NCBI RefSeq assembly: GCF_006345805.1
Contig: NW_021824748.1
Coordinates: 1-17,838 of the forward strand
Direction: 5' to 3'
Source of the DNA: Octopus sinensis
Taxonomy: Eukaryota
Length of the DNA stretch: 17,838 bases
Shown here: positions 1 to 17,838 of the stretch, one piece after another
Layout of the letters: the number at the start of each line of letters is the position of its first letter
How positions within the stretch are numbered: position 1 is the first letter of the stretch
Made by a program: the position numbers and the translations under genes
Notes under the pieces: model-generated
Databases searched by the model: none
What the model was told of the DNA's origin: nothing
What the model saw: only the letters and a program-made list of their open reading frames with translations

Positions 1-440
1 AGGGGCGATGGCAAGAGGCCGGACGGCGTCTCGCTCTTCCCGTTCAAGTGCGGCAAAGCGATCGTCTGGGACGCGACATGCTCTGACACTTTTGCGTCAA
101 CATGCCTTCTCGCGTCCGCGATCGAAGCTGGCACAGCGGCGAGGAGGGCAGAGACCCGGAAGAAAGACAAGTACGCCTCGCTCGCCGACAGATTCTCTCT
201 TTGTGCCTGTTTCATCGAACACATCAGGCACATTCGGCCCAGCCACGCTACGTTTTCTCACCGAGAGAGGCCGTCACCTCGGGAGGATTAGAAACGACCC
301 CCGTGAGGTCAATCGGCTTTTTGAGCGCGTCTCAATAGCCGTACTCAGGGGGAACAGTTTTCTATTCTCTCTGCGGCTAGTAGCTGACTCCCCGTTCCAT
401 TTTCTTTTCTATAAAATTATGTATTTAAAAAAAAAAAAAA
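1..440 (+). mobile_element. 3' end of a CRE-clade non-LTR retrotransposon (restriction-like endonuclease domain, frameshifted) with poly(A) tail; 5' part lies outside the window
   Basis: Stitched frames read GKRPDGVSLFPFKCGKAIVWDATCSDT...K-KY..L.DRF.FVPVSSNTSGTFGPATLRFL...DPRE..RLFERVSIAVLRGN. This is the RPDG / WDxT / KxxKY / RGN signature of CRE-type RLE C-termini. A14 tail at 427-440. Confidence 0.85.
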
Positions 441-631
441 CTAAATTATTAATCGATTTATAAAAAAAATAATAAAAGGTAACTTATATTATTTTTGGAC
501 GTTGAATTCAAAAATGTTATCAGATATGAGATCAGACCTTCATACTTCGAGATCTAGAAATTGGTCCCTTATCTCCACGTAGAAATGTCTAACATAAAAA
601 TGAACTTGTTTTTTGGGTTCGCGAGAAAATT

Positions 632-2767: not shown

Positions 2768-3298
2768 AGATCTCCACTTGTGTGCAACCAATCGACCTGA
2801 TTTTTCCAGGACAACTGCCTCCCTTGAAGGTCTACTATTTTAACTTGTTCAAACTCCTCTAAACATTTTTACTATCTCATACTAAGGAACCATGTACGAT
2901 CTAACTTAAGATGTCAGACTTACAATGTAAATAAGAAAATAAATTAATTAATTAAAAATATTGTTATATATCAATTTTGATCTTTTATGAACGTTTTTGC
3001 ATGCAAAACTGGAGTCAGACGTTCCTAGACCTTAGTTTCTTTATAGGCTACTACAATGTATGCTAAGCCTATCCATAAGGGCCCTTCTACAAGAGGCCTG
3101 GAATTACGCAGTTTATTGATAAAATCTCTAGAATACATTAACAAATTCCCTAAACATATTATAAATTAGTTGATTAACAAATTTGAAAAGCTGAACTGTC
3201 TGAACTTTACATATTTCTAACTAAAAATGAGTCTTTATTTCCCGACAAAACACCCCCCCAAGATCTCCACTTGTGTGCAACCAATCGACCTGATTTTT
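2768..3298. repeat. 38-bp exact direct repeat pair (2768-2805 and 3261-3298)
   Basis: AGATCTCCACTTGTGTGCAACCAATCGACCTGATTTTT occurs at both positions. Confidence 0.9.
2953..3170 (+). repeat. ~218-bp dispersed repeat, left arm of an inverted pair with 6905-7122
   Basis: Direct alignment with the reverse complement of 6905-7122 shows roughly 90% identity by eye. Weaker homology may extend to ~2905. Confidence 0.9.
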
Positions 3299-3607: not shown

Positions 3608-4509
3608 AAATTGCCCAGAGAACAACTGTCCAAACAATATCACTACGATTTTGGACTCCGAGCTCTGAAATCAGTGCTTGTGATGGCCGGTGATTTGAAA
3701 AAAACTTCCCCTGATCTTTCGGAGGTCTCGTCTTTATCTAATGAGAACAGGAAGTGGTCCTGATGAGAACACTGAGAGATATGAACCAACCCAAATTCAT
3801 CTACGAAGACATCCCTCTGTTCCTTGGACTGATTTCCGACCTTTTCCCCGGGCTCGACTGTCCTCGAATTCGGTACCCAGGCTTCAATGGCGCGGTGGAA
3901 ACATCTTTGAGGGAAAATAATTACGTTTTGCTCGAATCACAAGTTGCCCCTTTTACTGATTCCGAAGGTTAACAAAGTGGTACAAATGCACGAGACAATG
4001 ATGACGAGGCACACCACCATGATCGTGGGGCCAACGGGGGGAGGCAAATCGGTGGTTATCAAAACGTTGGCCGATGCTCAAACGAGGTTATTTCGTCGAT
4101 CTACTCCAAGACTCGGGATACACACCAAACTATTCATTTTGAACCCAAAGGACAGGCCCGTCGTCAAATTATACGGAATATTAGATCCCACAACCCATGA
4201 TTGGACCGACGGGCTCCTTTCCAACATATTCCGCGAAATAAACCGGGCTCTGCCTCAGGACAAGAACGAAAGACGATATGTCGTGTTTGACGGCGACGTG
4301 GATGCGTGTGGGTGGAGAACATGAATTCCGTGATGGACGACAATAAACTGCTGACACTCGCCAACAGTGAGAGAATTCGACTCCAGTCCCACTGCGCACT
4401 GTTGTTTGAGGTTTGTTGCAGAAATCATTTTAGGTCGGTGATTTGAAGTATGCTTCTCCTGCTACTGTTTCCCGAGCTGGGATGGTTTATGTCGACCCCA
4501 AAAATGTCT
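3608..4509 (+). pseudogene. DNAH10: Internal fragment of axonemal inner-arm dynein heavy chain (end of AAA1 to AAA2 region), DNAH10-like, retaining 4 micro-introns
   Basis: Introns at 3725-3750, 3943-3967, 4087-4110 and 4411-4433. Spliced: [25 protein letters not shown]...MRTLRDMNQPKFIYEDIPLFLGLISDLFPGLDCPR...TRHTTMIVGPTGGGKS...DGDVDA(L)[19 protein letters not shown]...[26 protein letters not shown], closely matching the DNAH10 sequence as I recall it. There is a 1-nt deletion near 4307. Both ends break mid-exon. Confidence 0.9.
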
Positions 4510-6904: not shown

Positions 6905-7122
6905 ACTGATTTATAATATTTTAGGGAATTTGTTAATGTATTCTAGAGATTTTATCAATAAACTGCATAATTCCAGTCCTCTTCTAGAAGGGTCCTTATG
7001 GATAGGCCATTAGCATACATTGTAGTAGCCTATAAAGAAACTAAGGTCTAGGAACGTCTGATTCTAGTTTTGCATGCAAAAACGTTATAAAACATCAAAA
7101 TTGATATATAACAATATTTTTA
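6905..7122 (-). repeat. ~218-bp dispersed repeat, right arm of an inverted pair with 2953-3170
   Basis: Reverse complement aligns to 2953-3170. Confidence 0.9.
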
Positions 7123-7153
7123 TAAACATTGTATTGACATTTTAAGAAAATAA

Positions 7154-7829: not shown

Positions 7830-9409
7830 AAAAATATTGGGAATGAACTTAAGTATGTTTTGCAAATGGGCGTAAAATTTATCAATTATATCTACTCTGT
7901 TTCGTCGACATAACTGTCCATTTTTGTTCTTTACAATTCTAAGGTACCCATCTTCCCCCAAACACGACCCCAACTATTTTTATATTTAATTTCTATGCCG
8001 GTTTTTTATGAGCCAGTATTCTTTTCCATTATCTACCCCATATCCAACGAGACACGCTGCATGTACGCTGTTACATCCAGGATCATCAAAAATTCCTATA
8101 ATGTTATACAATTATACCTCCTGAATACGAATACAAATATTTCGATATACAAATTGTAATTCCGAAAGGACCAATTTTCAGTAAAGTTCTTAATGCCAAA
8201 AAATGGTAAATATTGACATAATCTGTGACTACTATTGGATTGTTTTTATATCTGCATTCTTTTTTCTATTACAAAGTACAGTTTTATAAACCATTCCAAG
8301 ATAAGGGTACTGTTCAGTTGTGCTGATTCCCCCATTTTGAATGATATATTCATAAGCGTAATACTGGGATCCGCTTTTACATCGACAATATTCACAGCAA
8401 TCAAGCACGTTTTGTTTACTAAAACTAACCAACTTGTCATGCTTAATCGCATATTGATCTTCAAGACTGGCAATCTGAAGAGTAATTATTTATTTACCAA
8501 CCGCGCTGAATATATAACATGATTCAAAATTATGCTGATTTTTGACATTTATAACTACATTTTTATCTCCAGTCAAAAAATAATGAAAATCCTTTTCATT
8601 TTCTGAGAAAAAAGATGTTCCGTAGTCACTTGTGTCAAAATAATTTAATTTGTGTAGCTTTGGAAGTTCATCCTCAGTCTGGGAATATTTCTAACACAAA
8701 ACAACCATATCTGCGAACGAGTTTATTTCTAGTTTTTTTTTTTAATTAACAATAATTGATTAAAAGACAACGAAAAACGTTAAGTCCCAGCGGCAAGGAC
8801 GCAGTGTGCGTTGCCCCGAACAATGGCCAGGCCGATGCGCTGGCGGAACCAGAGGCCCTCTCTCGTGTCCTTGAGCCTCCTCCCGATGGACTACCCGACC
8901 TCTTTGAGGAACGAGTCAGTCTCCTTTCCCGCAGCTCCAGCGGTCTCCAGGGCGATTGCCGTAACGCGGTAGCGGTCCGCGAGCGAAGAATATTTTTGTA
9001 GTTTCATCTTTTCGGCGTGGTTTGCAGCCGAACAAGGGTTTGCGGCGGAAGAATGGATCCTCGATTTTGAAAAGGTATCCACAACGGTAACATCCCATAC
9101 GATGGCCTTCCCCGACGAGTACGGGAATATCTAGTTGGAAGGAAATGGCATTTCTTTTAAATTCCAAATTGTGTCTATCAATCAAAGCCAAATTATTTTG
9201 AAACTCTGTCTGATTGTATTTTTGTCGCTAAAAATTGTATATTTTAAATGCCAACTAATTTTTTAGTGAACTCTTCCCATCGCTGATTACTTTTTGTGCC
9301 ATATAAACTAATTAATTTTTTTCTTTTTCTTCCCAGAAATCTATTTCGGATTTGTAGTGATCAAAATAAGAATTGTCGCGATCAAAATCAGAAAAGATAA
9401 AAACAACAT
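7830..9409 (-). pseudogene. Cathepsin L-like (papain family C1A) cysteine protease with signal peptide and I29 prodomain, interrupted by a CRE insertion and frameshifts
   Basis: ATG at 9409 gives a hydrophobic leader (MLFLSFLILIATILILI). Then FQNNLALIDRHN (ERFNIN-like), SFQL|EINSFADMTEDE (GNFD-like), FDWR, VKNQHNFESCYIFSAIASLEDQYAIK, SFSKQNVLDC, NGGISTTEQYPY, VHAACLVGYG, YWLIKNRWG and GEDGYLRI. There are at least six 22-28-nt introns, one GC-AG (7973-7998). The 3' end is approximate. Confidence 0.85.
8733..9129 (-). mobile_element. 5'-truncated CRE-clade retrotransposon 3' end with poly(A) and 7-bp TSD
   Basis: IFPYSSGKAIVWDVTVVDTF...AEKMKLQKYSSL...ALETAG...RQRIGLAIVRGN. A11 tail (T run 8733-8743). 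TCTAGTT is duplicated at 8728-8734 and 9130-9136. Confidence 0.88.
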
Positions 9410-10004: not shown

Positions 10005-11547
10005 CTACACTTTCTTTCTGATTTCATAAAAATCATGAAGAGAATCTGGAATCAAATCAAAGATGTTTGTCTCTAAGTTTTCCATCAAACTTAAAATTTG
10101 TGATATTGATGGTTCGCAGCTTATATTCTCATAGATATTTGGATCATTATCTTCTATTTCATCAAAACATTCATCAATAACATTATTAAATATTTCTTCA
10201 GATGATTCATTTATGCAACTCGAGTCTGATGGAAATTGTCGAAAAACCTTTTGCCAGCAGTTATAAATAATATCCGCAGATACATTATTCCAAGCATCTG
10301 AGATTATTGTTACCACTTATCGCAAATTTAATTTGGATAAAGACTCTATAAACAAATCCTGGTCATCTTGAAAACATAAAAAATCAATTAGACAATTCCA
10401 ATAATGGAAACATAAATATTTGCAAGAAAGAAATTAAAGATAGCTATGTTAATTAAAGGCCTCACGAGACACCCGACCAGCCTCGCGAATGGCGAAGCCG
10501 TTCCCTCGGATCACAGCAATCGACAGACGTTCCAGGAGCCAAGAAAACTCTCTTGGATCGTGACTAGTCCTTGAAATCCGTCGACCGAGCGAGCGAAGGA
10601 AGCGGAGTGTCTTGGGACCGAAGATCCCGGAGGACCGAAGATTCCAATAATTATCCTTGATTCCAGCATCCAATGGTTGAAGTATTGGTGTCGTATTTTT
10701 TGGTAAAATAAAAAATCAACGTTGCTAAATGTCGATATTTTGTGGCAAGCAGCGTTATCTAATAACATTAAGATTTTTCTTTTTTGAATAATCATTTTTT
10801 CATTAATTTTTTTGAGCCATGATATAAAAATATCTCTTGTCATCCACGCATTTTTGGACGAAGAGTATGAAATTCCATAAATTTCGGGAGAAAATTTTTT
10901 GAAACATCTAGGATTTCTATATTTTCCGATTATTAATGGTTCATATTTTTCTCCAGTGTAACTACAGCATAGATGAAGAGTAACTTTATCTTTACTCCTT
11001 TTAAAGCCCCGTGCCGAATCACCAGTTTTCACGAATGATTTACGTGGGGTAAGTTTGATAAAAAGAGAAGTTTCGTCACAATTAAAAATGTTCTCCTTTC
11101 AATATTGTTCAACTTTGATATTTAATTCTGATAAAAAATTCAAAATTATCGCATGATCAGCAGATGCGGATTCGCCTGACAATGTTCGGAATTTTAATTC
11201 ATGCCTCTGCTTGAATTTTTCTAACAATCTATTTGAAGCTTTAAACTTGTTTAAGCCCATTCTCGAAGAAACAGTTAGGGAAATTTTTTTTAAAGAGTTC
11301 CAGAAACTGGAACATTCTGATCCCTTAGACGCTGAAAAATATCAAGGACTTTTTCATCAAGTCCGTTTTTATTTTCACTTAATGATGAGGAAAGAAATCC
11401 TTTTTTGATAAATGGAAGAATATTCTTTTTTATACGAAAAATAGTTCCCTTGCTAGTATTGTACATTATGGATAATCTCCTCTCAGAATGTTCTTTCTTT
11501 AAAAGATGATCAGCAATCTTCAACTTGGTTTCATAATTCAAAGGCAT
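10005..11547 (-). pseudogene. Tigger/pogo transposase (HTH-psq, CENP-B HTH, DDE_1), frameshifted and interrupted
   Basis: MPLNYETKLKI...NVPVSG, FKASNRLLEKFKQRH, IFNCDETSLF, GFKRSKDKVTLHLCCSYTGEK..PLIIGK..NPRCFK, KNAWMTRDIF..WL, LMLLDNAACH, QPLDAGI and ISDAWNNVSADIIYNCWQK. Confidence 0.92.
10406..10640 (-). mobile_element. Short CRE-clade 3' fragment inserted in the pogo transposase; 11-bp TSD, no poly(A)
   Basis: SGIFGPKTLRFLRSLGRRISRTSHDPREFSWLLERLSIAVIRGN. ATTCCAATAAT is duplicated at 10395-10405 and 10641-10651. Removing the insert restores QPLDAGIKDNYWNCLIDFL. Confidence 0.85.
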
Positions 11548-11674
11548 TACACAAGAAATTTGAAATGAAACGTGTCTTAAAATATTTATTTTTTAAATTG
11601 GTATTAATTAATTTTATTTAATAAAAAATCAATCCCCCAAATAGAGATGTTAAAATTAATTGATTTTTTATAAA

Positions 11675-11948
11675 TTTTTTTTTTTTTTTTAAATGACAAA
11701 CTTATTGTTAATAAACGAAAAGAGTTAAAATGCGCAGCGAATCGACTGGCAATTCCCGCGCATGATGGCCAATGAGATCCTTTGAAAGAGTCTGATCGAC
11801 TCGTTGGGATCTTTCGTAGCAACCACGAGCTTAGATCCAAGGCGACGGAGAAACGATAGCGTCTGCGGACCGATGACTCCAGAGGTTTCCACCGCGACTG
11901 CAGCGAATAGGTGATTCATGGCCAGGACCCGGTACTTCTTCTGTTTTG
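11675..11948 (-). mobile_element. Short CRE-clade 3' fragment with poly(A), inserted in the pogo 5' noncoding region
   Basis: QKKYRVLAMNHLFAAVAVETSGVIGPQTLSFLRRLG...DPNESIRLFQRISLAIMRGN. T16 at 11675-11690. TTTTATAAATT occurs at 11666-11676 and 11949-11959 (AT-rich TSD). Confidence 0.85.
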
Positions 11949-12279
11949 TTTTATAAATTGGTTAAAAAATTTATAATGCCCCAAAACAGAGTTTTCCCCA
12001 AAAAAGAGGTGCCCCACCCCTGGAGGTGCGCCCCAATTAGAGGTCGGACTGTACCAACATCTCAGCCTAAATACGATGCTAGTCCCCTTTAAAGGGAATT
12101 TTATATCAATTCTTTAAGCGTTTCTCAGATTTAATTAAAACACTTAATAAAAATTTTAAAAATGGTTTCTATAAAAAGTTTGTTAGGTCAATTTTTGTAA
12201 TTAAGTCAATTTTAAATAAAACTAAGAACAAAATTCAAAAGTCCAGATAATTTTTTTTTATAAATTATGTTAGTTGCCC

Positions 12280-12587: not shown

Positions 12588-15143
12588 TTAAAAATCAACA
12601 ACAGGAGTAGCACTAGCAGTCTGCAAAGAATACTTCATTTTAGCCGGATAGTTGGTATTATTAATCAATGAATAAGATATCCCTACCATAACACACAATT
12701 TCTACCATCCAACACTTCATAGAAATTCCCCCTCCACATCACAAAAGAATCACTTTCGTCAATCTCCATCTCTACAGTCCCAGCCTGCACTGTCAAAATC
12801 TAGAATTTTATACCTCACAACTAACTAAAAATATCCCCTCCAAAGTCACCAACGGCTTTCTAGAATGAGGAAACAGCACCAACAATCCAAATAAATTGGG
12901 CCTGTCATCACAGTGGGAATACACCGCGTGTGTCTCAAAGGACTCCAACAGTTGTACTCTCCTCACAATCGACACTAAACAAACTAATAAACACTAAAAT
13001 AACACTGATCTCTAACTTCCCTCAAATTAGAAGTAAATTGAGGAATAATGACATTATTGGGTTTTGACTTGATTGGGTCGTTATGAACTAAATTGACTTT
13101 ATACCAACTCACGATATGAACGGAGGTGTTTTGTTATCCCCACAATCTGCAACCCATAGCCAAAGTCCGAATATTTAATCCTCTCTCCATTAAAAGGGTC
13201 TAGCCCGACCACTCGTACTCGATTTGACTGGCGAGATGACAACGGGTTCAATTCAGGCACAACTTTAAATTAGTTACACACAAACTTATTCTAGCTCGGA
13301 TTCCATCCGCTGCCAATCGCTATGTACGTTTAGTTAACAAGCCCATACCTCGTTGATTCCCTCAAATCTGGCGATTATGTCAGCGATAGGTTCTTCATCG
13401 GCTATGGGCATCATCGAATCATTTATTCTGCCACTTGAGAGACGTGTCCTTTTATTACGTCGTTTTTTCTTGTTCTTAGCCTTCCTGATATATATACTAA
13501 TATTAAATAAAACCACTTTCGGGGTGATCCATCAGGGATATCAGCCATCATCAGATCCGTCCCAATTTGTTTATCAACCATTACCGGAGAATTAATTTCC
13601 ATAACCACTTTCTCTGCTAAAATTTCATCAGTATACAGACTAGGATCACTAAAAATGTGTATCAGGACACAACATACCCAACTTTGACGGAATTTGTTAC
13701 TCGAATTGGACTATTGAGTTCCGAATTTACAGTCGAAGAGGGGGAAAATGACACATTAGGATTATTTTCAATAAAAATGTTGCCGGAATTCAATGATTCT
13801 CGATTTTTGTTCAAGGAGGGGCCAACGAGGATCACATCCTCAGGTTCGCTATCAGAACTAGCAATAAAAGTGACTCGTCTTTTTTTTTTCTTCGATAGAT
13901 ATTCCTCAAAATCAAAATGAACACCTTCCTTCTCAACAATCTTACCCACCTCGCCAAAATGAGTCTTGTTCTTGCTCTTGTCTCGACTGGAAAGGTTTTC
14001 ACGTGCAGTCGTGTTTCGACCTTTCTTTAAAATGGACACTGTCGATTTGGAATGAGGGACACCAGTGGTCACTTGTCCAAAATTAGGATTCTTTTGATGG
14101 ATGACAGGCTCATCTTGTATTATATGACTTTTGGCTTTAGAGTTTTCCTTATTGTATAATCTTTTCGAGTTTTTTGACGACTTTTTTGGCGAAATTGAAT
14201 CAGATATATTCAAATTAGAACCTTCGTGGCCCATAACAGTCTCTTGTCCCAAGAAATGCGTTTTATCAGAATTTTTATCATAGGAAACTTCACGAGTGCG
14301 ATTATTATGGCTATTTTTGGCCATTCTTGAAACTCTCTTGGTTGAATTTCTGCTATTTTCAACACCAGAAGGTAATTCGTAGATGATTTCGACATCTTCT
14401 ATCTCGTGTCCCGAGGATTGGGGGTTCTCATCAGCCAAATCAGAGAAATAATCACTTCTATCCACATCTGTCCCAGCTTGAAATCCCAAAGATATCATTT
14501 CAGGTCTATTCTGACTCTTTTGTGTAGAGTCTCTTTGAACTGAGGCGATTGAGATATCCTGGGGATCATCCCTCCATAAAGGGTTTTGCCTTTCTTGCTC
14601 AATACTCATCTTGTAGGTCGAATTCGGCCACTTTGAGTGAGAAACCTTACGAGTAATCAATCCTTGTACAGGTCCTCCAATTGAGGATTTTAATAACTTT
14701 GTTAAATTGGCATATTCAGAGCTTCTTAGCATGTCATCCATGATAGGGGACTCCGCAGGGAACAATTCGGCGGTTTTTTCAGATTTTTTGCTATTTCTGT
14801 CCACATTTGATGACCTTGGTTGGAATTTTACTACTGATGGATGATTTGTCTTATCTTTCGGTGCTGAAAATAAACGTAGATAGTTATTCTGTGGGATTAA
14901 GATGGAATTTTTAACCAAAATGCTCCTGTCTTGTATTGGTGGAGGATTTCCATGGCTCTGTTCTTCGTAACGAGTGCTTTCTAATCCGCTAATGTCGTGA
15001 TCTTGGTCATTTGGGTGGATTTGGATTTCTGGTTGTTTAGAGCAGGGCAATTACCGTCAGGGAGAAGAAGCTTGTGCGTTTTTTTATTTCCAAGTTCCTT
15101 TAATATTCTTTTTTTACTAAAAGTTGTTATTATTTGACATCAT
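12588..15143 (-). CDS. CENPC: CENP-C/Mif2-like inner kinetochore protein (~762 aa, 11 exons, no frameshift required)
   Basis: GT-AG introns at 15138-15117, 15054-15029, 13677-13649, 13516-13485, 13348-13320, 13285-13263, 13112-13088, 13003-12975, 12813-12785 and 12705-12683 give a 2289-nt open frame. The protein has a long S/K/R-rich disordered region, RQSNRVRVVGLDPFNGERIKY (CENP-C-motif-like), and a cupin-like C-terminus (LFGLLVLFPHSRKP...GTVEMEI...FVMWRGNFYEVLDGISYSLINNTNYPAKMKY). The first 5-nt exon and the 12813 donor are the least certain parts. Confidence 0.7.
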
Positions 15144-15326
15144 TTTTGAAGATTAAAATATAATTAATGTCACCGGCCGTAGGATGGACGGCGCCGTTGA
15201 GTGGACACTAAGCAATATTTTTAATTAAAAATATTTTTACAATAATAATCTCCATTAAAAAATCAAAATTATTTAAATAATTTATTAAATATTCCTAATT
15301 TTTGTTTAATTAAGAATCGCGTGAGA

Positions 15327-16036
15327 ATGGTTTTGTTGTATCTATTGCAATCCTTTGTTGAAAAATTAATTAATTATATTGAAACTGGCTTGATAGAAGA
15401 TGAAACACAGAGGAAAGAACGTTTTAAAATACGTTCTCTCTCAAAAAATTTTATTTATGAGCAATCTGTGCTTTTCATTCTGAAAAATGGTAAAAAACTA
15501 AGATTCTTCACAATCGAACAAAATGAATTTAAGATGAAAACAATTGAGGTAAATATAAAATCACATTTTGTAGGCTGAACACAATTTAAACCATTTTGGT
15601 CGTGATAGGCTTTATTCCAAACTCTGTGAAGAAATTTATCCGATTACGAGAAAAGAGGTCCTTACTGTTGTTAGCCGGTGTGAAGTTTGCCAGGTTTAAT
15701 ATTTATGAGCAATATAGGCAGACATTACAGAAGAAAATACAGTTGCAATATTAGAACAGAGAAATAATGTAGTAGAAAATTTAGAAAAAGCAGGAGCGAA
15801 AATGTCTAAAAAAGGAAATGGAAATTCGACGAAAAGGATATAAATGTCGGAGATTCTGTTATTATCCGACATGATAGAGACGCAAATGTGAATAATAGGA
15901 AATATCATCTTCACAATGAAATATCTTCAGAGAAATTTTATATCGTCGACAAAAAAATAATTTATGTGTGTTAAAAGATGAAAATGGAACAGAAATTGAA
16001 TCCATTCACATTAGTAGACTCAAACGATTAGTTTAA
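15327..16036 (+). CDS. Integrase-derived protein (~220 aa): H2C2 zinc-binding domain plus C-terminal domain, DDE/rve catalytic core absent; 2 micro-introns, 2 probable homopolymer frameshifts
   Basis: Introns at 15549-15573 and 15694-15717. Exon 2 = AEHNLNHFGRDRLYSKLCEEIYPITRKEVLTVVSRCEVCQ (HxxxH...CxxC). Exon 3 = ...RNNVVENLEKAGAKM...DINVGDSVII...ENGTEIESIHISRLKRLV*, if one A is added in each of the runs 15808-15813 and 15951-15957. Confidence 0.7.
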
Positions 16037-16099
16037 ATTTTTGGTTAATAAAATTTTAAAAATTGTATAAAAAGTTTTTCAACTTAAAATAAGAAGCAA

Positions 16100-17093
16100 A
16101 CACACCGCGGCCGAAGGCCGCATAGGGGAATAGTTGGATTCCAAAAAAATCCGGCCGTAGGCCAATTGGTTTAGGTTGGACCTTAAAAACTACACACCGC
16201 GGCCGAAGGCCGCATAGGGGAATAGTTGGATTCCAAAAAAATCCGGCCGTAGGCCAATTGGTTTAGGTTGGACCTTAAAAACTACACACCGCGGCCGAAG
16301 GCCGCATAGGGGAATAGTTGGATTCCAAAAAAATCCGGCCGTAGGCCAATTGGTTTAGGTTGGACCTTAAAAACTACACACCGCGGCCGAAGGCCGCATA
16401 GGGGAATAGTTGGATTCCAAAAAAATCCGGCCGTAGGCCAATTGGTTTAGGTTGGACCTTAAAAACTACACACCGCGGCCGAAGGCCGCATAGGGGAATA
16501 GTTGGATTCCAAAAAAATCCGGCCGTAGGCCAATTGGTTAGGTTGGACCTTAAAAACTACACACCGCGGCCGAAGGCCGCATAGGGGAATAGTTGGATTC
16601 CAAAAAAATCCGGCCGTAGGCCAATGGTTTAGGTTGGACCTTAAAAACTACACACCGCGGCCGAAGGCCGCATAGGGGAATAGTTGGATTCCAAAAAAAT
16701 CCGGCCGTAGGCCAATTGGTTTAGGTTGGACCTTAAAAACTACACACCGCGGCCGAAGCCGCATAGGGGAATAGTTGGATTCAAAAAAATCCGGCCGTAG
16801 GCCAATTGGTTTAGGTTGGACCTTAAAAACTACACACCGCGGCCGAAGGCCGCATAGGGGAATAGTTGGATTCCAAAAAAATCCGCCGTAGGCCAATGGT
16901 TTAGGTTGGACCTTAAAAACTACACACCGCGGCGAAGGCCGCATAGGGGAATAGTTGGATTCCAAAAAAATCCGGCCGTAGGCCAATGGTTTAGGTTGGA
17001 CCTTAAAAACTACACACCGCGGCCGAAGGCCGCATAGGGGAATAGTTGGATTCCAAAAAAATCCGGCCGTAGGCCAATTGGTTTAGGTTGGAC
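16100..17093. repeat. Tandem array of ~10.9 copies of a 92-bp GC-rich multi-hairpin unit
   Basis: Units start at 16100, 16192, 16284, 16376, 16468, 16559, 16650, 16742, 16832, 16922 and 17012. They differ only by single-base deletions. Confidence 0.98.
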
Positions 17094-17838
17094 TTACTAC
17101 CTGAAAGCCTAAGGCTGGATAAGAAGTAATACGTATGCAGCAATTAAGGTTTGGTTAGGGTTCCCTTTAGAAATCTGTACTGGTCATCTCTAAAATTGCT
17201 GTTAGGATACCAACGTCTATTTTATTTAATAAATTTTACAAATAAATTCGATTTATAACTATTAAAAAGTATTATTTTAAATGGTAAACCTCGAAATATA
17301 ATAAACATTATGATTTTTAATCAATAATCGTAGAAAAAACGGTGTGGTTGGTTTTGTTAGCTCTCTTATTTTCTCAAAAGTCACCAAATTCATCGAAAAT
17401 AGGCTTAAAATGGGACTTGGAAAAAATAAGGTATGTTTTATATGAGCAAAATTGAAATAAATGAGATTTTGAAAGTGTCCAACGAACGGCGCCGTCCAGC
17501 CTACGGCCGGTGACAATTAATATTAATTTTATACAATCGTCGATCCATTGTTGCTCTGAATAAACACACAAGTTGTTGTTGCGCAATAAATTAATATGCG
17601 CCATTATATATTTGGTTTATATTTAAAAACAATTAAATTCTCGATTCTGAATGCTTCAAAAATTAATTTGTGTGATTTACGATAACGTATTTTTTAGGAA
17701 AATACTATCAAACGGAAAAAACGACTTGATTTTAAACTAAACAGTTCTAAGCTGATTTGTTAATTCTATTGTTCAACAAAAGCTTTAAGTTTTCCTGAAG
17801 CGACAAAAAATTTGTTTTGAAAGTAAAGGTTGTTTTCC

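What the first reader, a model, noticed from the sequence alone, without database searches (positions are those of the whole stretch)
15168..17515. Ginger2/TDD-like element encoding a spliced integrase with the catalytic core cleanly missing
Seen: intact TGT...ACA TIRs and a perfect 5-bp TSD. The gene has host-type 24-25-nt introns. Exon 2 is exactly the H2C2 zinc finger (120 nt, phase 0-0) and splices straight to the post-catalytic C-terminal region, so the whole DDE core is absent precisely at an intron. The only lesions are two A-run frameshifts that look like read errors. Known: Ginger elements are cut-and-paste transposons with gypsy-like integrases and can contain introns. Inference: an intron-to-intron deletion created a non-autonomous element that may still express a multimerisation/DNA-binding-only protein. 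That protein could act as a dominant-negative regulator or a domesticated binder of the adjacent repeat array. Truncated binder + array + TIR next to a centromere gene is the best candidate for an undescribed system in this window.
Basis: partly seen in the sequence, partly recalled or inferred. Interest (0 to 1): 0.8.

Follow-up and report, generated by a model that had tools for sequence, protein, structure and literature searches.

The report
Core-less Ginger2-type transposon copy
This is a young, non-autonomous copy of a Ginger2/TDD-type cut-and-paste transposon that has lost its catalytic core in a deletion ending inside a tiny host-type intron; this is an ordinary kind of transposon decay, and nothing shows that the leftover protein has a job.

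Summary
The sequence-level observation holds. The element spans 15168-17515 (2,348 nt). It has 42-nt TGT...ACA inverted ends (38/42 identical) and a perfect 5-bp duplication, ATTAA. Its gene has 25- and 24-nt introns around a 120-nt zinc-finger exon. That exon joins directly to the C-terminal domain.

Full-length relatives (340-480 aa) carry about 190 further residues at this junction. Those residues hold the whole D,D35E core.

Relatives found in metagenome and read-archive contigs have homologous TGTCACCG... ends. One also has a 5-bp duplication. They encode integrase only, and their nearest named proteins are KRBA2/SCAND3-like. Filing the element as Ginger2/TDD-like is therefore reasonable.

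Host-type 23-26-nt introns were confirmed in a dynein fragment in the same window.

Not supported:
- The "centromere gene" is probably a pogo transposase remnant 3.6 kb away.
- No other core-less relative was found.
- An intron-to-intron origin could not be tested without the parent element.
- Whether the two A-run frameshifts are read errors remains unresolved.

The 92-nt array lies inside the element and repeats an 11-nt motif from the inverted ends.

Best reading: a trans-dependent deletion derivative. A repressor role like that of the P-element KP protein is possible but unproven.

The parts
15163..15167 (.). Left copy of the 5-bp target-site duplication, ATTAA
   Evidence: Read directly from the sequence. 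It is identical to 17516-17520. Chance probability is about 0.003 from the flank composition.
15168..15209 (+). Left terminal inverted repeat, TGTCACCGGCCGTAGGATGGACGGCGCCGTTGAGTGGACACT
   Evidence: Found as an inverted-repeat pair. It matches the right TIR at 38 of 42 positions. It is homologous to the TIRs of the L006 and TARA relatives.
15210..15326 (+). AT-rich 5' non-coding region (presumed promoter and 5' UTR)
   Evidence: Assigned by position only. No test was made.
15327..15548 (+). Exon 1 (74 aa): the family-typical N-terminal domain ending in the RFF..E..FK motif
   Evidence: It aligns with the N-termini of full-length relatives from the same start Met. The AlphaFold2 model shows two helices plus a three-stranded sheet, with pLDDT of about 97.
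15549..15573 (+). Intron 1, 25 nt, GTAAAT...TGTAG
   Evidence: Removing it is needed to keep the reading frame. It also restores exactly the RFF-to-HFGRD spacing (19 aa) seen in the intronless relative L001, and the zinc-finger position 77-113 seen in P0003.
15574..15693 (+). Exon 2, 120 nt, phase 0-0: the H2C2 (HHCC) zinc-binding domain
   Evidence: Pfam PF17921 scores 26.6 bits against a cut-off of 25.5. It matches P0001 at 41% identity over 39 aa.
15694..15717 (+). Intron 2, 24 nt, GTTTAA...ATATAG; this is the junction where about 192 aa of catalytic core are missing
   Evidence: It carries in-frame stops if retained. Relatives continue from CxxCQ straight into the D,D35E core at this point. 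The GTT donor matches host dynein introns.
15718..16036 (+). Exon 3: a linker helix plus an SH3-like C-terminal domain, ending in the stop TAA at 16034-16036. Two -1 frameshifts lie in A6 (15808-15813) and A7 (15951-15957).
   Evidence: It matches the P0001 C-terminus at 39% identity over 109 aa. The frameshift sites were located. The beta-barrel is modelled with pLDDT 80-96.
16047..16052 (+). AATAAA hexamer 11 nt after the stop codon; a possible poly(A) signal upstream of the array
   Evidence: Read from the sequence. Its function was not tested.
16100..17093 (+). Tandem array of 10.9 copies of a 92-nt unit, lying inside the element. Each unit carries the TIR motif CCGGCCGTAGG plus a degenerate second copy (CACCGCGGCCGAAGG).
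   Evidence: TRF reports 98% matches. The units show 0 substitutions and 8 single-base deletions. The 11-mer has 12 hits against 0.05 expected.
17094..17473 (+). AT-rich spacer between the array and the right TIR
   Evidence: No ORF, no Rfam match and no repeat were found here.
17474..17515 (-). Right terminal inverted repeat, ending ...CCGGTGACA
17516..17520 (.). Right copy of the 5-bp target-site duplication, ATTAA

Best explanation
The element is a young, non-autonomous copy of a compact Ginger2/TDD-type cut-and-paste DNA transposon.

Full-length family members are about 1.9-2.3 kb. They have TGTCACCG... inverted ends. They encode one 390-480-aa integrase-like transposase with five parts: an N-terminal extension domain, an HHCC zinc finger, a D,D35E core, a linker and an SH3-like C-terminal domain.

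This copy lost about 0.6 kb or more, covering the whole core. The deletion junction now lies inside a 24-nt GT...AG intron of the host's size class. The remaining exons therefore still join in frame.

The copy keeps both 42-nt ends, and its perfect 5-bp ATTAA duplication records an integrase-type insertion. It cannot cut or join DNA itself. It can move only if a full-length relative in the same genome supplies transposase in trans (inferred).

The internal 92-nt array is an expansion of end-like sequence that multiplies the terminal motif CCGGCCGTAGG. The preserved core-less reading frame is most simply a by-product of the copy's youth and of the host's minimal splice signals. It is not evidence of a new function.
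For: - TIRs and TSD are present as described.
- H2C2 passes the Pfam cut-off.
- P0001 matches on both sides of the gap at 39-41% identity and carries 192 extra residues that include rve.
- Among 26 representative-library hits, every protein that matches both the N- and C-terminal parts (342-478 aa) contains the core; the shorter hits match one part only. The zinc finger sits at the same residues, 77-113, as in P0003 and the TARA element.
- A full-length relative was rebuilt from two overlapping TARA contigs. It is 1,862 nt with TGTCACCGG ends, a 5-bp TSD (TAAAA) and a 388-aa D,D35E protein with 5 tiny introns.
- The L006 element is 2,272 nt. Its TIR aligns with the window's along its length; by eye about three quarters of the first 40 positions match.
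- Family members encode rve only and are named KRBA2/SCAND3-like. RT-bearing polyproteins score at most 156 bits, against at least 212 bits for the family.
- KRBA2 and SCAND3 derive from the Ginger2 clade (PMC3575427).
- TGTNR ends, 5-bp TSDs in TDD-4/5, and the absence of YPYY and GPY/F define Ginger2 (PMC2836005).
- Host introns of 26, 25 and 23 nt with GTC/GTT donors occur in the dynein fragment.
- L009 is another truncated derivative carrying internal short tandem repeats, so this kind of decay recurs in the family.
Against: - No autonomous partner from the same genome could be examined. Trans-mobilisation and the deletion mechanism are therefore inferred.
- A deletion that lands in an intron and keeps phase 0 on both sides is not the commonest outcome of random breakage. 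That leaves some room for selection on the reading frame.
- Placement in Ginger2 rests on defining features and on similarity-derived names. It does not rest on a tree with TDD-4 or Ginger2 reference sequences.
Confidence: 0.8

Rival explanations
1. The core-less protein is a functional regulator like the P-element KP repressor. It would keep the end-binding and multimerising modules (N-terminal extension, HHCC, SH3-like CTD). It could poison transpososomes built by the full-length enzyme, or occupy the ends and the 11-22 end-like sites in the array.
For: - The junction is in frame and falls between domains.
- The AlphaFold2 model is confident (mean pLDDT 90.2), with a continuous helix across the junction.
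- The best PDB fold matches are PFV and Ty3 integrases, whose NED, NTD and CTD contact DNA ends. The E-values are only about 2e-3.
- The array repeats the TIR 11-mer.
- An AATAAA hexamer lies upstream of the array.
- The KP precedent is taken from my own knowledge of P elements.
Against: - No transcript or binding data are available.
- No second core-less relative was found.
- There are two frameshifts in exon 3. If they are real, they remove the CTD.
- The youth of the copy (perfect TSD, zero substitutions in the array) explains the intact frame without invoking selection.
Confidence: 0.12
2. The copy is simply dead: both A-run frameshifts are real slippage mutations, so at most a 146-aa N-terminal fragment plus a short out-of-frame tail could be made.
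For: - Two of the four A runs of 6 or more in the CDS are shifted. All 11 A7 and 10 A5 runs in the array are uniform, and the array's 8 deletions hit only 2-nt runs. Fisher's exact test gives p = 0.057 (A7 runs only) or p = 0.018 against 22 array A-runs, one more than the 21 counted (11 A7 + 10 A5), so that value is approximate.
Against: - Identical array units would hide a systematic undercall.
- The assembly does carry single-base deletions: 8 in the array with 0 substitutions, and possibly one in the dynein fragment.
- Both CDS shifts are -1, the same direction as those deletions.
Confidence: 0.45
3. The gene is a domesticated host gene, or a fragment of an LTR retrotransposon, rather than part of a DNA transposon.
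For: The nearest named homologues (KRBA2/SCAND3-like) carry the names of domesticated genes.
Against: - The gene lies inside intact inverted (not direct) repeats with a TSD.
- Relatives are TIR-bounded units of 1.9-2.3 kb.
- Neither the element nor the family has RT, RNase H or an LTR.
Confidence: 0.03

Closest known systems
[quoted passage not shown]
   Same: - The termini follow TGTNR (here TGTCA), and the 42-nt TIRs are close to, though slightly shorter than, the roughly 50-180 bp reported for metazoan Ginger2.
- The TSD is 5 bp, as in TDD-4/5, and the target is AT-rich.
- The transposase family has H2C2 plus D,D35E and lacks the YPYY and GPY/F motifs.
- There is no RT.
   Different: - This copy lacks the DDE core.
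- Metazoan Ginger2 elements make 4-bp TSDs.
- This family is very compact (1.9-2.3 kb).
- It has 24-25-nt introns.
- It carries an internal 92-nt array of end-like sequence.
KRBA2 and SCAND3/ZBED9 (mammalian genes with a Ginger2-derived integrase domain; PMC3575427)
   Same: They are the nearest named homologues of the family's full-length proteins.
   Different: They are TIR-less host genes that keep the catalytic fold. The names on the hits are transferred by similarity, not tested.
P-element KP repressor (an internally deleted P element encoding a DNA-binding and dimerising protein without a catalytic domain; own knowledge)
   Same: It is an internal deletion derivative whose remaining frame keeps the N-terminal binding and multimerising parts and loses catalysis.
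   Different: - It belongs to an unrelated transposase superfamily.
- KP's repression is shown experimentally; nothing is shown here.
- KP spread to many copies, whereas here only one copy is known.
Prototype foamy virus and Ty3 integrases (PDB 4e7k, 3oyk, 4bac, 7q5b)
   Same: These are the best fold matches to the model. They share the N-terminal extension domain plus HHCC bundle and the SH3-like C-terminal barrel.
   Different: The matches are marginal (E about 2e-3, TM 0.3, because the core is missing). Those enzymes have the catalytic core domain between the NTD and CTD.
Ginger1 / Gin-1
   Same: It is also a Gypsy-integrase-related TIR transposon with TGTNR ends and occasional introns.
   Different: Ginger1 has YPYY and GPY/F motifs, 4-bp CCGG/CCGT TSDs, and extra OTU or Ulp1 domains. 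None of these is present here.

Membership tests
Ginger2/TDD | Terminal inverted repeats whose ends follow TGTNR...YNACA | tested here: met
   The ends are TGTCA...TGACA. The TIRs are 42 nt with 38 of 42 positions matching.
Ginger2/TDD | Target-site duplication of 4 bp (metazoan) or 5 bp (TDD-4/5) at an AT-rich target | tested here: met
   A 5-bp ATTAA lies on both sides. The TARA relative has a 5-bp TAAAA.
Ginger2/TDD | Transposase with an H2C2 zinc finger | tested here: met
   PF17921 scores 26.6 bits against a cut-off of 25.5.
Ginger2/TDD | Transposase with a DDE (D,D35E) integrase core | tested here: not met
   The core is absent from this copy: a 192-aa gap at the intron-2 junction. It is present, with a D-D offset of 39 and a D-E offset of 36 residues (that is, D,D35E), in nearly all full-length relatives checked; the first D motif was not picked up in three of them. 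The copy therefore belongs to the family by descent but is non-autonomous.
Ginger2/TDD | No YPYY and no GPY/F motif (distinguishes it from Ginger1 and Gypsy) | tested here: met
   Neither motif occurs in the window protein or in the 19 relatives checked.
Ginger2/TDD | No reverse transcriptase, RNase H or LTRs | tested here: met
   The element is 2.3 kb with one gene. Family hits are rve-only. RT-bearing hits score at most 156 bits against at least 212 bits for the family.
Ginger2/TDD | Phylogenetic placement with TDD-4 and Ginger2 reference transposases | not tested
   No reference sequences were available. The only support is indirect: the nearest named proteins are KRBA2/SCAND3-like, and those genes derive from the Ginger2 clade (PMC3575427).
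Non-autonomous deletion derivative | A full-length partner with matching TIRs in the same genome | not testable with these tools
   The source genome is not searchable. TIR and protein scans of metagenome contigs found nothing. Exact-protein look-ups also found nothing.
KP-type truncated-transposase repressor | The truncated protein is expressed, binds the element's ends and inhibits transposition | not testable with these tools
   Only domain content and a confident fold are available.
LTR retrotransposon or solo LTR | Direct long terminal repeats and gag/pol with RT | tested here: not met
   The repeats are inverted and there is no RT.

The most novel reading that the evidence does not exclude
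The 220-aa protein (N-terminal extension, HHCC and SH3-like domains, no core) is made and acts as a trans-dominant regulator of the family, a Ginger-type counterpart of the P-element KP repressor. The internal array of 11-22 end-like sites would act as a decoy or loading platform for it or for the full-length transposase. The exon-precise loss of the core would then have been favoured by selection.
Probability: 0.1. Interest if true: 0.6.

Novelty: new member of a known kind. Interest (0 to 1): 0.3.

Why it matters
As it stands, the finding is a clean textbook example of how a cut-and-paste element becomes non-autonomous. It also adds a compact Ginger2/TDD-type family to a host with 23-26-nt introns.

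Two side points could interest transposon and intron specialists.

First, related elements from tiny-intron hosts carry introns at entirely different positions, while relatives elsewhere have none. That makes this family a possible tracer of recent intron gain.

Second, if the core-less protein proved to be active, it would be the first KP-like regulator described for an integrase-type DNA transposon. Neither point is established here.

Tried and rejected
- The exact-match scan of JGI metagenome contigs with a 24-base TIR pattern found nothing.
- The back-translated peptide scan of the same collection gave 70 pattern hits, none confirmed.
- Exact-protein look-ups for the element's unspliced first ORF and for the neighbouring 462-aa ORF found nothing on record. 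The host could therefore not be named and no sister copies were retrieved.
- The P0010 loci L002 and L003 show no convincing TIRs around the gene.
- L006 has no matching TSD in the 8 nt of right flank available.
- Two-sequence MAFFT alignments of the window protein with P0001 misplaced the zinc finger. BLASTP and larger alignments were used instead.
- Rfam at E up to 1 found no RNA family in the element or the array.
- I considered using the dynein frameshift as proof of assembly error and dropped the idea. The dynein piece lies between 200-nt inverted repeats and may itself be a pseudogene fragment.
- I considered dN/dS against relatives and rejected it. At 39-53% amino-acid identity, synonymous sites are saturated and most divergence predates the deletion.
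- I rejected the idea that intron 2 holds a relic of coding sequence. The ATGAG.AAT similarity to the TARA codons after CxxCQ is out of frame and short.
Full report

Yes. The window carries a 2,348-nt unit at 15168-17515.

- It is bounded by 42-nt inverted repeats that start TGTCACCGG and end CCGGTGACA. They match at 38 of 42 positions.
- A 31-nt TIR pattern hits only these two sites, against 0.00 expected.
- The pentamer ATTAA lies immediately outside both ends (15163-15167 and 17516-17520). Given the flank composition, the chance of this is about 0.003.

The gene model is as follows:

- The ATG is at 15327.
- Exon 1 is 15327-15548.
- A 25-nt GTAAAT..TGTAG intron is at 15549-15573.
- Exon 2 is 15574-15693 (120 nt, phase 0-0).
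- A 24-nt GTTTAA..ATATAG intron is at 15694-15717. It contains in-frame stops if retained.
- Exon 3 runs from 15718 to a TAA at 16034-16036.

Exon 3 is interrupted by two -1 frameshifts. One is in an A6 run (15808-15813) and one in an A7 run (15951-15957).

**2. What the protein is**

The spliced protein, with the frame restored at the two A runs, is 220 aa. It passes the Pfam cut-off for Integrase_H2C2 (26.6 against 25.5 bits). All four zinc ligands are in exon 2.

Its only close database relative is P0001. P0001 has the zinc finger, a Pfam rve core and a C-terminal region.

- The window protein matches P0001 at 41% identity over the zinc finger and 39% over 109 C-terminal residues.
- It has nothing for the 192 residues in between.

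An exhaustive HMMER scan of 1.84 billion representative proteins found 26 relatives.

- Every hit that matches both the N- and C-terminal parts of the query (342-478 aa) contains the core.
- None joins the zinc finger directly to the C-terminal domain.

The window protein starts at the family's usual Met. Its zinc finger sits at residues 77-113, exactly as in P0003 and the TARA protein. It is therefore a full-length family protein minus the core.

The strings produced by adding one A at each frameshift (KKRKWKFDE and DKKNN) are conserved in P0001, P0028 and P0037. The two shift sites are therefore placed correctly.

**3. The family**

Two overlapping TARA Oceans contigs (L005 and L004) share a 576-nt identical overlap. 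Together they give a complete relative:

- It is 1,862 nt long.
- Its ends are TGTCACCGG.../...CCGGTCACA.
- It has a 5-bp TSD, TAAAA.
- Its 388-aa protein, in six exons, has an intact D,D35E core.

A Logan contig (L006, encoding P0002) holds a 2,272-nt element with an intronless 413-aa gene. Its TIR, TGTCACCGTCCGGTGGGCGGACCCCGCCGTTGG, aligns with the window's TIR along its length.

The strong profile hits (at least 212 bits) are all rve-only proteins of 230-500 aa. Where NCBI names them, they are called KRBA2-like, SCAND3-like or 'putative transposable element'. Most named examples come from Microsporidia, plus Octopus. Polyproteins that carry RT and RNase H score at most 156 bits.

KRBA2 and SCAND3 derive from the Ginger2 clade (PMC3575427).

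Bao et al. (PMC2836005) define Ginger2/TDD by the following:

- TGTNR termini.
- H2C2 plus DDE.
- No YPYY or GPY/F motif.
- 4-bp TSDs in metazoans, or 5-bp TSDs in TDD-4/5.
- AT-rich targets.

Each of these features was checked here and met, apart from the missing core of this particular copy. I did not build a tree with TDD-4 or Ginger2 references, so placement in the clade is by features and indirect naming only.

**4. Introns**

A dynein heavy-chain fragment in the same window reads continuously once three introns are removed:

- 26 nt at 3725-3750, GTCTCG..ACAG.
- 25 nt at 3943-3967, GTTGCC..GAAG.
- 23 nt at 4411-4433, GTTTGT..TTAG.

'Host-type' is therefore correct, and so is the weak GTT donor of intron 2.

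Among animals, such introns are known only from myxobolid myxozoans and Dicyema. In those groups the splice signals shrink to GTa...AG (PMC13644364). The host itself could not be identified.

Intron 1 is well supported. Removing it restores the exact 19-residue spacing between RFF and HFGRD that is seen in the intronless L001.

The 'intron-to-intron deletion' idea could not be tested, for three reasons:

- The TARA element has five introns (39, 24, 28, 22 and 24 nt). None is at either window position. One of them, at phase 1, does lie in the variable linker between the core and the C-terminal domain.
- L009 has a 33-nt intron at yet another site.
- With signals this minimal, one breakpoint inside an intron plus any in-frame downstream AG would be enough.

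**5. Are the frameshifts read errors?**

This is unresolved.

- In favour: the 92-nt array has 0 substitutions but 8 single-base deletions. The dynein fragment has one single-base deletion. Both CDS shifts are also -1.
- Against: all the array deletions hit 2-nt runs, while its 11 A7 and 10 A5 runs are uniform. In the CDS, 2 of the 4 A runs of length 6 or more are shifted. Fisher's exact test gives p = 0.057 (A7 runs only) or p = 0.018 against 22 array A-runs, one more than the 21 counted, so that value is approximate.
- Caveats: identical array units would hide a systematic undercall. The dynein piece sits between 200-nt inverted repeats and may be a pseudogene.

**6. The array**

The array at 16100-17093 (10.9 copies of 92 nt) lies inside the TIRs, downstream of the stop codon and of an AATAAA hexamer.

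- The TIR motif CCGGCCGTAGG (TIR positions 6-16) occurs in both TIRs and in ten of the eleven array units, always in the left-TIR orientation; one unit carries a single-base deletion in it. That is 12 hits against 0.05 expected.
- The other half of each unit carries a degenerate copy, CACCG-CG-GCCGAAGG.

The array is therefore an expansion of end-like sequence, not an independent neighbouring feature. L009 shows that other decayed family members also hold internal short tandem repeats.

**7. Fold**

AlphaFold2, run on a 31-sequence alignment, gives a confident model with mean pLDDT 90.2. It shows:

- Two helices and a three-stranded sheet at residues 1-60.
- A three-helix HHCC bundle.
- One long helix running across the deletion junction (residues 111-147).
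- A C-terminal beta-barrel.

The best PDB matches are prototype foamy virus and Ty3 integrases. They are followed by SH3, KOW and Tudor barrels. E-values are about 2e-3 and TM-scores about 0.3, as expected when the core is missing.

This supports the domain labels (N-terminal extension, NTD, CTD). It says nothing about expression or activity.

**8. Context**

- The window is a nest of transposons.
- The likely 'centromere gene' is a fragmented pogo/Tigger transposase (DDE_1 at 74.5 bits, HTH_Tnp_Tc5) at 10008-11592 on the minus strand. It lies about 3.6 kb from the element.
- The nearest ORF (13662-15050, minus strand, 462 aa) has no Pfam match. Its 5' end lies 113 nt from the insertion.

**9. 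Verdict**

The best-supported reading (confidence 0.8) is a young deletion derivative of a Ginger2/TDD-type element.

- Shown: it retains both ends and the insertion scar, it cannot catalyse transposition, and it belongs by descent to a family with intact members elsewhere.
- Inferred: it is mobilised in trans, and the deletion arose at an intron.

A KP-like regulatory role for the core-less protein remains possible (about 0.1), but no result obtained here supports it. Novelty: a new member of a known kind.

Noticed in passing
window 2956-3160 and 6915-7123: Inverted repeats of about 200 nt (95-97% identical) bracket 3.75 kb. The enclosed DNA holds a dynein heavy-chain fragment (3611-4500, three 23-26-nt introns, one frameshift near 4306) and a non-LTR endonuclease-like ORF. 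This may be a TE-captured or pseudogene fragment rather than the live dynein gene.
   Followed up: partly
window 10008-11592 (minus strand): A fragmented pogo/Tigger-type transposase (Pfam DDE_1 at 74.5 bits, HTH_Tnp_Tc5). It resembles CENP-B only in the sense of shared transposase ancestry.
   Followed up: yes
window 1-500 (+), 8750-9130 (-), 10452-10715 (-), 11607-11961 (-): Four GC-rich (about 44-46% GC) pieces encode similar protein tails (...G..TL.FL..LG.....DP.E...L.QR.S.A..RGN...). They look like 5'-truncated copies of one retroelement family inserted at four places.
   Followed up: no
window 7900-8600 (minus strand): Pieces of a cathepsin L-like gene (Peptidase_C1, 57.9 bits). The splice-site calls are irregular and a retroelement tail lies just upstream. 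The gene may be disrupted or affected by single-base assembly errors.
   Followed up: partly
L005+L004 (TARA contigs), L009, versus L001, L006, L008: Family members from tiny-intron hosts carry introns at entirely different positions: the window has 2, the TARA element has 5, and L009 has at least 1. Other relatives are intronless. This suggests fast intron gain or loss in a DNA-transposon gene.
   Followed up: partly
L009 230-500 and 1040-1056: Another decayed family member. Its C-terminal domain is cut off and replaced by 18-nt AAAAAGCCCGAAAG-type tandem repeats with an inverted copy downstream. The contig ends in ...ACGGTCACA, a family-type terminus.
   Followed up: partly
L001 130-132: An in-frame TGA sits in the otherwise continuous reading frame of the closest relative. 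It is 11 codons upstream of the HFGRD motif, near the position of the window's intron 1. It could be a mutation, a sequencing error or a reassigned codon.
   Followed up: no
L006 63-129: The left end of the P0002 element is itself a near-palindrome (TGTCACCGTCCGG...CGTCGGACGGTGACA). This looks like a back-to-back duplication of the terminal repeat.
   Followed up: no
protein hits: The named members of this compact integrase-only family are mostly from Microsporidia (Dictyocoela, Nosema, Pseudoloma, Nematocida). An Octopus protein is also a strong hit, and a Mytilus protein is a weaker one (75 bits). Its presence in several unrelated parasites hints at horizontal spread.
   Followed up: no
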